Source: Stylophora pistillata
Lineage: Eukaryota
Assembly: GCF_002571385.2 (NCBI RefSeq)
Contig: NW_019217844.1
Span: 190,407 to 254,406, forward strand
Reading direction: 5' to 3'
Length of the DNA stretch: 64,000 nucleotides
The translations under genes and the position numbers were made by a program. Positions 54,573-57,461 of the stretch are shown in pieces. Numbering within the stretch: the first letter of the stretch is position 1; every line of letters starts with the position of its first letter. Under the pieces are notes generated by a model. It did no database searches. It saw nothing but the letters and a program-made list of their open reading frames with translations, and was not told where the DNA came from.

Positions 54573-55094
54573 CACACCGTTACTGGGTTGAGTTCTGTGA
54601 TATTTGCAGTGTTTCGTTCCCTCGGACGTTGAAAATCGTGTTAGCGACCTCTTAGCATACTATGGTGGCCGAGAACTGCCATTAAAAATATTCATATTTA
54701 TAGGAATTATTTTTTTAATTTCGATTTATTTCTCATTTTTCTTTTTAAAATAAAAGCAAATGAAAGTAAAATGTAAAATAGAAATAACATGAAACCAAAG
54801 ATAAAAGAAATCAAATCAAAATTACATACTACCCGGCCGAGCGCTGCGACTAGTTTTTTTCTTTTTTTTTTTTGGCGGTCGGAAAAATAATTTGTTCGTG
54901 GCCGAACGCTGCCACATGGCCGAGGGCTGCCAAACAAACCCAGAATTCTTTGCAGGATGCCCTTCAAGATTCTAGTATGGCTGATGCCGCGTGGAAAAGC
55001 TAAAAAGAGAAAGTGACTGCGAAAAGAGGGAAGAAGCGTGCTGCAGGAGATACAACGCATAAATTAATTAAAGGAAAGGAGCTGTATAATAATA

Positions 55095-57171
55095 ACTGTC
55101 GAATCCAACGAAGAATAAGAGCCGTTTGCTCACGGTGGGTTTCGCAATGCATACAAATCAACCACAAAGCACCCACAGTTTAAGGGGACTATCTGGGTCA
55201 TTAAAAGATACCTTCCTGATGCTGTGAGGGGAATAAATGACATTGGGCAAACTGTCCAACAACATACCCAAAAGGCAGTTCAGATGCATCTTCTTGCAAG
55301 GAAGTTTGCTCGCCAGTTGGAACAAAAAATCATTGCAAAACATGCATTTGGAGAGGTCCTAAGGTATAGAAAGATCTACTACGGGGAAGATGATAAAGGA
55401 GAATTTGCTACTGTGGAGATTATTGATGGACAGTTTACCAAGTACTTAAACAATACTGGTGATTGTTGTGTCGAGGAAACAGATGTTATGGGTCAGAAGG
55501 CTCAATGTGTAACCCATTTTTCTTATGAAAAGTCAGACAAAAAACTAATGCTGCTAGACATACAAGGACATACGGTAGCTTCAAAGGGACAAACACTTTC
55601 CTCTCTCTTTTTTTTCACTTGCGACTTAGCTGCTACTTTCTTGCGACTTAGCTGCGACTTTCTTGCTACTTTCTTGCGACTTAGCTGCGACTTTCTTGCG
55701 ACTTAGCTGCGACTTTCTTGCTACTTTCTTGCGACTTAGCTGCGACTTTCTTGCTACTTTCTTGCGATTTAGCTGCGACTTTCTTGCTACTTTCTTGCGA
55801 CTTAGCTGCGACTTTCTTGCTACTTTCTTGCGACTTAGCTGCGACTTTCTTGCTACTTTCTTGCGACTTAGCTGCGACTTTCTTGCTACTTTCTTGCGAC
55901 TTAGCTGCGACTTTCTTGCTACTTTCTTGCGACCTAGCTGCGACTTTCCTGCTACTTTCTTGCGACTTAGCTGCCTGGCTACCTAGCTGGGCCGAGTGGN
56001 NNNNNNNNNNNNNNNNNNNNNNNNNNNNNNNNNNNNNNNNNNNNNNNNNNNNNNNNNNNNNNNNNNNNNNNNNNNNNNNNNNNNNNNNNNNNNNNNNNNN
56101 NNNNNNNNNNNNNNNNNNNNNNNNNNNNNNNNNNNNNNNNNNNNNNNNNNNNNNNNNNNNNNNNNNNNNNNNNNNNNNNNNNNNNNNNNNNNNNNNNNNN
56201 NNNNNNNNNNNNNNNNNNNNNNNNNNNNNNNNNNNNNNNNNNNNNNNNNNNNNNNNNNNNNNNNNNNNNNNNNNNNNNNNNNNNNNNNNNNNNNNNNNNN
56301 NNNNNNNNNNNNNNNNNNNNNNNNNNNNNNNNNNNNNNNNNNNNNNNNNNNNNNNNNNNNNNNNNNNNNNNNNNNNNNNNNNNNNNNNNNNNNNNNNNNN
56401 NNNNNNNNNNNNNNNNNNNNNNNNNNNNNNNNNNNNNNNNNNNNNNNNNNNNNNNNNNNNNNNNNNNNNNNNNNNNNNNNNNNNNNNNNNNNNNNNNNNN
56501 NNNNNNNNNNNNNNNNNNNNNNNNNNNNNNNNNNNNNNNNNNNNNNNNNNNNNNNNNNNNNNNNNNNNNNNNNNNNNNNNNNNNNNNNNNNNNNNNNNNN
56601 NNNNNNNNNNNNNNNNNNNNNNNNNNNNNNNNNNNNNNNNNNNNNNNNNNNNNNNNNNNNNNNNNNNNNNNNNNNNNNNNNNNNNNNNNNNNNNNNNNNN
56701 NNNNNNNNNNNNNNNNNNNNNNNNNNNNNNNNNNNNNNNNNNNNNNNNNNNNNNNNNNNNNNNNNNNNNNNNNNNAGCAAGTCGCAGATAAGTCGCAAGA
56801 AAGCAGCAAGAAAGTCGAAGCTAAGTCGCAAGAAAGTAGCAAGAAAGTCGCAGCTAAGTCGCAAGAAAGTAGCAAGAAAGTCGCAGCTAAGTCGCAAGAA
56901 AGTAGCGAGAAAGTCGCAGCTAAGTCGCAAGAAAGTAGCAAGAAAGTCGCAGCTAAGTCGCAAGAAAGTAGCAAGAAAGTCGCAGCTAAGTCGCAAGAAA
57001 GTAGCAAGAAAGTCGCAGCTAAGTCGCAAGAAAGTAGCAGATAAGTCGCAAGTGAAAAAAAACAGAGAGAGGAAAGTGTATGTCCCTTTGAAGCCACCGT
57101 AAGGACATGGGTATGAGTTATTCGACCCAGAAATTGCTTCTCATGAATTTTTTGATGGTAGTGCATTCTAG
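55095..57171 (+). pseudogene. Alpha-kinase (eEF2K/MHCK/TRPM7-type) domain fragment, interrupted by the insertion 55571-57101
   Basis: PFAHGGFRNAYK..WVIKRY..KAVQMHLLARKFA..FATVE.IDGQFTKYLNNTG..KAQCVTHFSYEKS..LMLLDIQG|HGYELFDPEIAS once the insertion and one TSD are removed; upstream in-frame stop; C-terminal Zn-binding segment missing. Confidence 0.85.
55571..57101. mobile_element. Foldback-type non-autonomous element (IS3EU-like termini TACGGT..ACCGTA, 6-bp TSD AGGACA) with inverted arrays of a 33-bp repeat
   Basis: AGGACA|TACGGTAGCTTCAAAGGGACA...TGTCCCTTTGAAGCCACCGTA|AGGACA; (TTGCGACTTAGCTGCGACTTTCTTGCTACTTTC)n on the left arm, reverse complement on the right arm, gap in the middle. Confidence 0.88.
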
Positions 57172-57461
57172 GTTTGTTTGGCAGCCCTCGGCCTTGTGGC
57201 AGCGTTTGGCCACCAACAAATATTTTTTTCCGACCGCGGGAAAAAAAAAAAAAAACTAGTGGCAGCGCTCGGCCGGGTAGTATTTAATTTTCATTTGATT
57301 TCATTTATCTTTGGTTTCATTTTATTTCTATTTTACATTTTACTTTCACTTGCTTTTATTTTAAAAAGAAAAATGAGAAATAAATAGAAATAAAAAAAAA
57401 TAACAAAAATAATTCCTACAAATTTGAATATTTTTAATGGCAGTTCTCGGTCACCATACCA

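What the first reader, a model, noticed from the sequence alone, without database searches (positions are those of the whole stretch)
54661..57458. Long-TIR DNA transposon carrying an alpha-kinase domain as cargo
Seen: ~280-bp TIRs starting TATGGTGGCC enclose an intronless alpha-kinase segment (GGFRNAY..VIKRY..FTKYLNNTG..HFSY..LLDIQG.GYELFDPEIA) and no visible transposase. The kinase is cut off right at the right TIR, indicating an internal-deletion derivative. Recalled knowledge: TAY..RTA termini with 6-bp TSDs characterise IS3EU elements, and alpha-kinases are atypical kinases (eEF2K, TRPM6/7, ALPK1) not generally known as DNA-transposon accessory genes. Inference: an autonomous parent may encode transposase plus alpha-kinase, which would spread kinase copies through the genome. 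This copy sits inside an immune-receptor cluster.
Basis: partly seen in the sequence, partly recalled or inferred. Interest (0 to 1): 0.8.

Follow-up and report, generated by a model that had tools for sequence, protein, structure and literature searches.

The report
Decayed kinase-bearing IS3EU transposon copy
This is a dead, internally deleted copy of a coral DNA transposon whose complete relatives always carry an alpha-kinase gene facing the transposase gene; the pairing is real and old, but has already been noted in print for fungal members of the same superfamily.

Summary
Two ~297-bp inverted repeats (54661-54957 and 57164-57458, 90.5% identical) start TATGGTGGCC/TATGGTGACC. They enclose an alpha-kinase fragment (PF02816, E=9e-21) and no transposase. 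A 1.5-kb foldback-type element with an 8-bp target duplication (AAGGACAT) splits the kinase, and the N gap lies inside it, so no reading frame crosses the gap. There is an in-frame stop at 55116-55118. A second deletion removed the kinase's N-terminal domain.

The window is from Stylophora pistillata. Complete relatives were found in Saccoglossus, a sea spider, marine plankton contigs and two unnamed assemblies. All show the same plan: long TIRs with a TATGGTGGCC tip, the kinase reading inward from one end, and an integrase-like DDE transposase reading inward from the other. Three of them have perfect 6-bp target duplications. A related-copy contig shows the kinase uninterrupted, followed by a transposase remnant and the same TIR.

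So this is a non-autonomous deletion derivative of an IS3EU/GingerRoot element, and the kinase is a conserved core gene rather than chance cargo. A 2025 paper already records alpha-kinase genes in fungal IS3EU. This copy has no detectable target duplication. Interest is moderate.

The parts
54661..54957 (+). Left terminal inverted repeat. The tip is TATGGTGGCCGAGAACTGCC. It holds four direct copies of the 15-bp motif GGCCRARNGCTGCSA (54667, 54835, 54900, 54918).
   Evidence: Alignment with the reverse complement of the right end. Tip found only twice in the window, 0 expected. Motif: 7 matches, all inside the two TIRs, 0.06 expected. 80-85% identical over most or all of its length (179-311 aligned nt) to ends in L001, L009, L010, L011 and L012.
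54958..55083 (+). Kinase-gene 5' leader and first ~36 codons. ATG at 54977-54979 (MADAAWKS), then a TAA at 55001-55003. The start codon and first codons are part of the family's extended inverted repeat.
   Evidence: 83% identical to the kinase-type ends of L009, where the frame reads on into ...ELTVQRLSSKVSGKAQKY. Compare P0007, which starts MATAWKHFKDAMKEK.
55084..55094 (.). Junction of internal deletion 1. About codons 36-200 of the kinase gene, the whole N-terminal beta-grasp-like domain, are missing.
   Evidence: Homology to L009 stops at about 55083. Homology to the L001/P0152 kinase resumes at about 55080-55092, at ITVESNEE.
55092..55571 (+). Alpha-kinase catalytic-domain fragment, part 1 (ITVESNEE*EPFAHGGFRNAY ... 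LLDIQGH), with an in-frame TAA at 55116-55118.
   Evidence: PF02816 at 75.2 bits, E=9e-21. 1ia9 (TRPM7 kinase) E=4.5e-7. 580 relatives at E<=1e-3. 89-95% nucleotide identity to L001.
55564..55571 (.). Left copy of the 8-bp target-site duplication AAGGACAT of the nested element.
   Evidence: Direct reading. The site is present once in the uninterrupted copy L001.
55572..57100 (.). Nested non-autonomous foldback-type element. Its TIR begins ACGGTRGCTTCAAAGGGACA. It carries 33-bp tandem arrays 55620-55974 and, inverted, 56779-57050. It contains the assembly gap 56000-56775.
   Evidence: Inverted repeats 94-97% complementary. Tips found only here. Tandem repeats reported. Absent from the homologous site in L001.
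57101..57108 (.). Right copy of the 8-bp target-site duplication AAGGACAT.
57109..57163 (+). Alpha-kinase fragment, part 2 (GYELFDPEIASHEFFDGS..), ending at deletion junction 2 (57163/57164). The Gly-rich loop and the Zn-binding HxCNxxC tail are missing.
   Evidence: 94.7% identical to L001:11700-11756, which continues into the kinase C-terminus. Alignment A5 shows the missing motifs in full-length relatives.
57164..57458 (-). Right terminal inverted repeat (tip TATGGTGACC on the minus strand). The TAG at 57169-57171 that ends the kinase frame lies inside it.

Best explanation
The feature is a dead, non-autonomous copy of an IS3EU/GingerRoot-superfamily DNA transposon in the stony coral Stylophora pistillata.

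Shown from relatives: the complete element has long TIRs tipped TATGGTGGCC. An alpha-kinase gene reads inward from one TIR. It encodes about 430 aa: an N-terminal ~90-aa beta-grasp-like domain, a linker and a C-terminal alpha-kinase domain. An intron-containing, integrase-like DDE transposase gene reads inward from the other TIR, so the two genes converge. Insertion makes 6-bp target duplications.

Shown for the window copy: it keeps both TIRs and the kinase's 5' end. It lost the kinase N-terminal domain in one deletion. In a second deletion it lost the kinase C-terminus, the spacer and the whole transposase. It acquired stop codons. It was later hit by an unrelated foldback-type element with an 8-bp target duplication, and that element now holds the assembly gap.

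Inferred: the transposase binds the terminal and subterminal 15-bp GGCCRARNGCTGCSA repeats in each TIR and moves the element by cut-and-paste. This copy could at most be moved in trans. The kinase is a selected accessory enzyme of the transposon. It most likely phosphorylates the transposase or a host factor to promote or time transposition or to blunt host silencing. That function is untested.
For: Anatomy of the window copy.

Organism: the window ORF 13857-16007(-) matches exactly a protein in NCBI, clustered with PFX29728.1 from Stylophora pistillata.

Related copy L001 (85-95% nucleotide identity): uninterrupted kinase catalytic region and C-terminus, then a degraded transposase on the opposite strand, then the same TIR.

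Elements with both genes:
- Saccoglossus L004:9166-17470, TSD GAGGAG.
- L008:9281-14332, TSD CATTTC. Its first 23 TIR bases differ from the window's left tip at one position and are identical at its right end.
- L015:8571-12995, TSD GTACAG, intact 434-aa kinase, 4-exon transposase hitting PF24764.
- Plankton contigs L005-L007, where the transposase passes the PF24764 cut-off.
- Pycnogonum L014, with TIRs of at least 1.7 kb at 99-100% identity.

Kinase under selection: the Lys, DxQG, DPE, GNL and HxC..C motifs are invariant or nearly so in 34 full-length proteins. The AF2 model has pLDDT 87.9 and matches TRPM7, MHCK-A, eEF2K and ALPK1 at E down to 2e-18. dN/dS between the window and L001 copies is 0.47.

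Literature: IS3EU ends TAYGG..CCRTA, makes 6-bp TSDs and, in rust fungi, carries alpha-kinase and transposase in opposite orientations (PMC12730594). IS3EU/GingerRoot has TA..TA termini and 6-bp TSDs and occurs in corals (PMC10045372 and PMC6839031).
Against: This copy has no recognisable 6-bp target duplication: GCATAC versus CCACCT, 2 of 6. Insertion as one unit is therefore not proven for it.

No labelled IS3EU reference transposase was available, so superfamily assignment rests on termini, TSD length, TIRs, the integrase-core Pfam hits and gene content, not on a phylogeny.

L001 has no left TIR within 10 kb, so no single complete element from the Stylophora family itself was seen. Whether L001, L008 and L015 are from S. 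pistillata or from other cnidarians is unknown.

The role of the kinase is pure inference. dN/dS rests on only 34 substitutions.
Confidence: 0.9

Rival explanations
1. One-off capture (Pack-TE-like transduplication): a TIR element without a kinase picked up a fragment of a host alpha-kinase gene.
For: Only a fragment of the kinase is present and it ends abruptly at the TIR. GingerRoot elements are reported to carry captured gene fragments often (PMC6839031).
Against: The left TIR runs without a break into the kinase gene's own start and first ~36 codons, exactly as in other copies. The same kinase-transposase pairing inside TIRs is seen in six loci from at least four animal lineages and in fungi. 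The closest relatives are multi-copy: 24 members in the nearest 90% cluster.
Confidence: 0.03
2. Not a single transposed unit. The two TIRs come from two different insertions of the same family, or from a larger rearranged copy, and were joined in place by recombination or deletion. This would explain the missing target duplication.
For: The flanks GCATAC and CCACCT do not match. The TIRs are only 90.5% identical. L009 shows that rearranged, chimeric derivatives with two kinase-type ends exist in this family.
Against: Orientation and order (kinase-end TIR, kinase reading inward, opposite TIR) are what two simple internal deletions of one element would give. Six-base flanks can decay in an element this old. 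GingerRoot surveys also find many elements with mutated TSDs.
Confidence: 0.15
3. A functional or domesticated host alpha-kinase gene that merely sits between two unrelated repeats.
For: The Pfam match is strong and the catalytic Lys, DxQG and DPE residues are still readable.
Against: There are in-frame stops at 55001-55003 and 55116-55118. The N-terminal domain and the C-terminal Gly-loop and zinc module are deleted. A 1.5-kb transposon splits the domain.
Confidence: 0.01
4. Assembly artefact: the gap and the inverted arrays reflect a mis-join, so the two kinase pieces or the two TIRs are not truly linked.
For: A 776-N gap of estimated length sits inside the feature, flanked by near-perfect inverted tandem arrays that are hard to assemble.
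Against: Both sides of the gap are mirror-image arms of one nested element with matching tips and a perfect 8-bp duplication. The kinase frame closes exactly across it. An independent contig has the two kinase pieces adjacent.
Confidence: 0.02

Closest known systems
IS3EU DNA transposons of rust fungi (e.g. IS3EU-7_PSt, IS3EU-3_PCor; Kojima 2025, PMC12730594)
   Same: TAYGG..CCRTA termini, TIRs longer than 30 bp, 6-bp target duplications (seen here in relatives), and transposase and alpha-kinase genes in opposite orientations.
   Different: The host is an animal (a coral). No TET/JBP gene lies between the two genes. The TIRs are much longer (about 300 bp here, up to at least 1.7 kb in Pycnogonum). 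This copy has no transposase, a broken kinase and no detectable TSD.
GingerRoot (Selaginella lepidophylla; related elements reported in Acropora digitifera, fish and oyster; PMC6839031)
   Same: TA..TA termini, 6-bp TSD, TIRs of 100 bp or more, integrase-related DDE transposase, presence in corals, frequent single-TIR or TSD-less decayed copies.
   Different: That paper's main text does not mention a kinase (0 occurrences). It describes captured gene fragments, whereas here the kinase is a conserved full-length second gene.
Styx (IS3EU-related element of Zymoseptoria; PMC10853768)
   Same: A multi-gene element built on an IS3EU-type DDD/E transposase plus a second ancestral protein.
   Different: Styx added lineage-specific genes. 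The paper does not identify the second ancestral protein as an alpha-kinase in the passages read. The host is a fungus.
Cellular alpha-kinases: TRPM6/7 kinase domain (ChaK), eEF2K, Dictyostelium MHCK-A, ALPK1
   Same: The same fold and the same catalytic Lys, DxQG, metal-binding Asp, Gly-rich loop and zinc module. Public annotation names the transposon proteins after them.
   Different: About 20% identity. The partner domain is a beta-grasp-like N-terminal domain, rather than the channel, calmodulin-binding, WD40 or sugar-sensing regions those host kinases carry (from established knowledge of those families). The gene is encoded inside a transposon next to a transposase and is multi-copy.
Pack-MULE / transduplicating DNA transposons
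   Same: A gene fragment lies between TIRs in a non-autonomous element.
   Different: The fragment here is a remnant of the element's own gene and is continuous with the TIR-embedded start codon. It is not a captured host exon.

Membership tests
IS3EU/GingerRoot superfamily | Termini 5'-TA...TA-3', specifically TAYGG...CCRTA | tested here: met
   Window: TATGG...CCATA. The same in L001, L004, L008 and L015. Definition taken from PMC12730594 and PMC10045372.
IS3EU/GingerRoot superfamily | 6-bp target-site duplication | tested here: inconclusive
   The window copy has GCATAC versus CCACCT, 2 of 6, so none is recognisable. Relatives with the same tip have perfect duplications: L004 GAGGAG, L008 CATTTC, L015 GTACAG. 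L009 has GTATAG/GTATGT. The feature holds for the family but not demonstrably for this copy.
IS3EU/GingerRoot superfamily | Long terminal inverted repeats (over 30 bp; 100-150 bp in GingerRoot) | tested here: met
   297 and 295 nt, 90.5% identical.
IS3EU/GingerRoot superfamily | Integrase-like DDD/E transposase | tested here: not met
   Absent from the window copy, as expected for a non-autonomous derivative. It is present next to the same TIR in L001 and in L004, L005, L008, L014 and L015. PF24764 (integrase core) scores 27.5 bits in L005 against a cut-off of 26; the other hits are weak because each was searched as a single exon. The lack of an HHCC domain was not examined.
IS3EU/GingerRoot superfamily | Transposase groups with Repbase IS3EU/GingerRoot references in a phylogeny | not testable with these tools
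IS3EU (kinase-bearing lineage described by Kojima 2025) | Alpha-kinase gene in opposite orientation to the transposase within the TIRs | tested here: met
   Convergent kinase and transposase in L001, L004, L005-7, L008, L014 and L015. The window copy keeps the kinase end in the expected orientation.
Alpha-kinase family (PF02816) | Profile match above the curated cut-off | tested here: met
   75.2 bits against a cut-off of 21.3, E=9e-21, covering profile positions 1-144 of 185.
Alpha-kinase family (PF02816) | Catalytic Lys, DxQG catalytic loop and metal-binding Asp | tested here: met
   VIKRY, LLDIQG and FDPE in the window align with K238, D359/Q361/G362 and D369 of P0007 and with the corresponding TRPM7 kinase-domain (1ia9) residues.
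Alpha-kinase family (PF02816) | Gly-rich loop (GNL) and C-terminal zinc module (HxCNxxC), i.e. a complete, potentially active domain | tested here: not met
   Deleted at 57163/57164 in the window copy. Present in full-length relatives. The window sequence is a kinase pseudogene fragment.
hAT-like (for the nested element 55572-57100) | 8-bp TSD, short TIRs with a hAT-type terminal motif, hAT transposase in autonomous relatives | tested here: inconclusive
   The 8-bp TSD AAGGACAT is met. No coding capacity and no relatives were found. The superfamily is left open, so it is described only as foldback-type.

The most novel reading that the evidence does not exclude
The alpha-kinase is an ancient, obligatory partner of the IS3EU/GingerRoot transposase across animals (cnidarians, hemichordates, tunicates, chelicerates) as well as fungi. 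It has its own beta-grasp-like N-terminal domain and, in some families, a start codon embedded in the TIR. On this reading it is needed for transposition or for neutralising a host response. Much of what genome annotations call 'TRPM6-like', 'eEF2K' or 'MHCK-like' genes in marine invertebrates, and the alpha-kinase expansions in rust fungi, would then be transposon genes.
Probability: 0.6. Interest if true: 0.6.

Novelty: new member of a known kind. Interest (0 to 1): 0.42.

Why it matters
The copy itself is genomic debris. The family behind it is a DNA transposon that has kept an active-looking protein kinase beside its transposase across several animal phyla, and reportedly in fungi as well. 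No function is known for that kinase, and in the searchable literature the pairing gets one passing sentence, for fungi only.

Recognising it has two uses. First, it corrects annotation: these genes are named as TRPM6-like, eEF2K or myosin-heavy-chain-kinase-like host genes in Saccoglossus, Paramuricea, Ciona, Phallusia and Aurelia, which inflates alpha-kinase gene-family counts. Second, it offers intact, apparently recent elements (Pycnogonum L014 and the 4.4-kb L015) as test systems for what a transposon-encoded kinase does.

Tried and rejected
(1) Reading the ends as TA target duplications of a Tc1/mariner-type element (TIR starting TGGTGG). Rejected: relatives show TATGG tips with perfect 6-bp duplications outside them.

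(2) Taking MADAAWKS after the left TIR as the transposase start, which would make the kinase inverted relative to the canonical plan. Rejected after alignment A8. The window's 5' region is of the kinase type (KEKVTAKRGKK... continuing to ELTVQRLS in L009). Both genes share the TIR-embedded ATGGCNGATGC.

(3) Looking for an empty target site or other copies of the flanks, or of the nested element, in the window and all loci. Nothing was found.

(4) Pfam on the 22-aa C-terminal kinase piece gave no hit because it is too short.

(5) The scan of JGI metagenome contigs with the 23-nt TIR tip returned only five contigs. Four were single ends and one was a chimeric short derivative, so no census was possible.

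(6) P0026 context: no DNA was available.

(7) Foldseek on the N-terminal domain model: the best E was 0.019 (UBL/PB1/ubiquitin-like), which is not significant. The fold is described only as beta-grasp-like.

(8) The two costly word-index protein searches were not used. The family scans and the one exhaustive HMMER search settled the protein.

(9) Joined models. The spliced or joined kinase, and the multi-exon transposases of relatives, were never searched or folded as joined sequences; pieces were searched by reference. In one search the two window kinase pieces were concatenated inside a script only to print a pairwise alignment. The dN/dS count was then redone piece by piece.

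Full report
1. What is in the sequence

The region 54661-57458 is bounded by inverted repeats of 297 and 295 nt. They have 258 identical positions, 27 mismatches and 22 gap columns, which is 90.5% identity over aligned bases. The tips read TATGGTGGCC on the left and TATGGTGACC on the right (reverse complement). The 28-nt tip occurs nowhere else in the 64 kb, and none is expected by chance. Each repeat carries a terminal copy and three subterminal direct copies of a 15-bp motif, GGCCRARNGCTGCSA. 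There are seven matches, all inside the two repeats, against 0.06 expected. These are plausible transposase-binding sites, but that is an inference.

Between the repeats, frame 55119-55571 matches Pfam Alpha_kinase at 75.2 bits, E=9e-21, profile positions 1-144 of 185. It also matches the TRPM7 kinase-domain structure 1ia9 at E=4.5e-7. No transposase-like coding sequence lies in the element or anywhere else in the window.

2. The gap, tested first as required

The run of N at 56000-56775 does not sit in the kinase. It sits in the middle of a second, nested element, 55572-57100. That element has its own inverted tips (ACGGTRGCTTCAAAGGGACA..., found only here). It also has 33-bp tandem arrays in mirror orientation at 55620-55974 and 56779-57050. 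It is flanked by a perfect 8-bp duplication, AAGGACAT, at 55564-55571 and 57101-57108.

Removing the element and one duplication closes the kinase frame exactly...LLDIQGH|GYELFDPEIA... An independent contig, L001, has this site uninterrupted and with a single copy of the octamer. So no reading frame crosses the gap, and the letters on either side are the two arms of one foldback-type insertion. I did not try to recover the gap's letters. Its length, and therefore the nested element's length, stays unknown.

- The ATG at 54977-54979 opens MADAAWKS and is followed by a TAA at 55001-55003.
- At about 55084-55094 the sequence jumps from roughly codon 36 of the kinase gene to roughly codon 200 (ITVESNEE). 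This removes the whole N-terminal domain.
- A TAA at 55116-55118 precedes EPFAHGG.
- At 57163/57164 the kinase is joined directly to the inner edge of the right repeat (GATGGTAGTGC|ATTCTAGG). L001 reads on at that point into the Gly-rich loop and zinc module.

The six bases outside the tips, GCATAC and CCACCT, agree at only 2 of 6 positions. This copy therefore has no recognisable target-site duplication.

4. Source organism and context

The window ORF 13857-16007(-) is an exact match to a protein in NCBI. It clusters with PFX29728.1, '5' exonuclease Apollo [Stylophora pistillata]'. Two TNFR-cysteine-rich/Death-domain paralogues lie at 39153-41124 and 46221-49909. The 'immune-receptor cluster' remark is therefore partly right. 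A tRNA-Arg-like SINE head lies about 90 bp to the left of the element.

5. Relatives

An exhaustive HMMER search with the 151-aa kinase piece found 580 proteins at E<=1e-3. The full-length ones are about 400-460 aa, with the kinase domain in the C-terminal half. Every genomic context with more than a few kb of DNA to inspect shows the same plan.

(a) L001 is an ENA contig 85-95% identical in DNA to the window copy. It has the kinase catalytic region and C-terminus on the plus strand. That region is interrupted there by a different, non-LTR fragment and not by the foldback element. It is followed by degraded transposase ORFs on the minus strand and then the same TIR at 15242-15537.

(b) L004 is from Saccoglossus kowalevskii. 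The element spans 9166-17470 with TIRs of about 590 bp that begin TATGGTGGCC. The kinase gene XP_077869811 ('TRPM6-like') is on the plus strand and an integrase-core ORF is on the minus strand. The target duplication is GAGGAG on both sides.

(c) L008 spans 9281-14332. Its first 23 TIR bases differ from the window's left tip at one position and are identical at its right end. The TSD is CATTTC on both sides.

(d) L015 spans 8571-12995 and is a compact 4.4-kb element. It has an intact 434-aa kinase, a four-exon transposase hitting PF24764, and the TSD GTACAG on both sides.

(e) L005-L007 are plankton contigs. The kinase is followed by a convergent transposase that passes the PF24764 cut-off (27.5 bits against 26). 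The tip there reads TGAGTGGCCTGGGACTGCC.

(f) L014 is from Pycnogonum litorale. Its TIRs are at least 1.7 kb long and 99-100% identical, and they enclose the kinase and the transposase.

A scan of JGI metagenome contigs with the TIR tip gave five more coral-type ends. One of them is a 1.2-kb chimeric derivative, L009. Named members of the protein family come from Paramuricea, Sanderia, Aurelia, Clytia, Phallusia, Ciona, Saccoglossus and Pycnogonum. They are annotated as TRPM6-like, eEF2 kinase or MHCK-D-like.

6. Is the kinase a selected gene?

In 34 full-length proteins the following are invariant or nearly so (P0007 numbering):
- the GGFR loop;
- the catalytic Lys (K238);
- D359-x-Q361-G362;
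- D369-P-E;
- the GNL loop;
- H403-x-C405...C409.

An AlphaFold2 model of P0007 has mean pLDDT 87.9. Its best structural matches are the alpha-kinase domains of TRPM7, MHCK-A, eEF2K and ALPK1, with E from 2e-18 to 7e-10.

The conserved N-terminal ~90 residues (VQRLS...CD[IV]LAGExGPSC...[IV]HVRF) fold with pLDDT 94 into a beta-beta-alpha-beta-beta unit. Its best matches are UBL, PB1 and ubiquitin domains, but none is significant (best E 0.019).

Between the two dead copies (window and L001), dN/dS is 0.47 over 167 codons and 34 substitutions. That fits a mix of selection in active lineages and neutral decay afterwards, but it is weak evidence on its own.

7. Interpretation

The window feature is a non-autonomous, twice-deleted and later interrupted remnant of a two-gene transposon. 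The left repeat is the kinase end. The family's inverted repeat actually extends to the start codon: ATGGCNGATGC (MADA) is shared by the kinase-type ends (window, L009) and the transposase-type ends (L001, L011).

Shown:
- the anatomy of the window copy;
- homology to copies that carry a transposase;
- the recurring gene plan;
- the 6-bp duplications in relatives.

Inferred:
- cut-and-paste movement by the DDE enzyme acting on the TIR motifs;
- that this copy could only be moved in trans;
- that the kinase serves the transposon, for example by phosphorylating the transposase or a host factor.

The missing target duplication leaves a real alternative: the present structure may have been assembled in place from two copies or from a rearranged one. 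I put that at about 0.15.

8. Comparison with what is known

The termini (TAYGG..CCRTA), the 6-bp duplications, the long TIRs and the integrase-like transposase match the published descriptions of IS3EU and GingerRoot (PMC12730594, PMC10045372 and PMC6839031). GingerRoot relatives were already reported in the coral Acropora.

Kojima 2025 states that the TET-carrying IS3EU families of rust fungi have transposase and alpha-kinase genes in opposite orientations. Alpha-kinases are also reported as highly expanded in rusts (PMC4469406).

In the searchable literature I found no description of the pairing in animals, and none of its function.

Membership in IS3EU/GingerRoot is well supported by structure. 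It was not tested by phylogeny because no labelled reference proteins were available.

9. Verdict

The object is a new member, and a decayed one, of a known kind. Interest is moderate. The copy itself is ordinary debris. The conserved transposon-kinase partnership behind it is under-described and experimentally open.

Procedural notes:
- Broken or spliced genes were searched piece by piece, by reference.
- The only joining was a script-internal concatenation for a printed alignment, and it was replaced by a piecewise computation.

Noticed in passing
window 54498-54571 (-), within about 54290-54590: A tRNA-Arg(CCG)-like sequence. It looks like the head of a tRNA-derived SINE, and it ends about 90 bp to the left of the transposon.
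   Followed up: partly
window 53634-53750: A tandem array of a 12-bp unit (TGGCCTACCCTG-like), about 9-10 units long.
   Followed up: no
window 57465-57564 and 57837-57882: Clusters of a short GTCCTTGAAA-type repeat on the right flank, starting 7 bp outside the right TIR. This may be another small repeat element and could bear on the missing target duplication.
   Followed up: partly
window 58411-58636: Two tandem copies of a 113-bp unit, 89% identical.
   Followed up: no
window 39153-41124 and 46221-49909: Two paralogous TNFR-cysteine-rich plus Death-domain genes in tandem. The Death domain scores 32.6 and 28.4 bits, above the cut-off. The TNFR_c6 hits are below the cut-off.
   Followed up: partly
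window 1632-2894 (-), 3050-7293 (+), 13857-16007 (-): Housekeeping-type ORFs: a KDM8-like cupin, FtsJ-like methyltransferase pieces, and an Apollo/DCLRE1B-like nuclease. The last gave the exact match that identifies Stylophora pistillata.
   Followed up: partly
L001:10687-11545 and L001:18003-20678: In the related copy the kinase is interrupted at a different site by a non-LTR retrotransposon fragment (227-aa ORF on the minus strand). A NACHT/LRR gene lies about 2.5 kb beyond the element's TIR.
   Followed up: no
L014:10291-14022 and 24756-26470 (Pycnogonum litorale OZ207733.1): TIRs of at least 1.7 kb at 99-100% identity, which suggests very recent activity. The public gene model P0030 takes its first ~85 residues from exons that are present in both TIRs.
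   Followed up: partly
L009:6570-7754 (JGI Ga0126338_10006675): A 1.2-kb derivative with kinase-type 5' regions at both ends. The left one is fused to the middle of the transposase. Its flanks are GTATAG and GTATGT.
   Followed up: partly
P0007, P0020, P0046, P0055, P0061, P0070 (public protein records): Transposon-borne kinases are annotated as 'TRPM6-like', 'eukaryotic elongation factor 2 kinase' or 'myosin heavy chain kinase D-like' host proteins in Saccoglossus, Paramuricea, Aurelia, Phallusia and Ciona.
   Followed up: partly
window 54977-54987; L001:15200-15212 (-); L009 both ends; L011: The start codon and first four codons (ATGGCNGATGC, MADA) of both the kinase and the transposase lie in the inverted-repeat part of the element. 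The two proteins therefore begin alike.
   Followed up: partly
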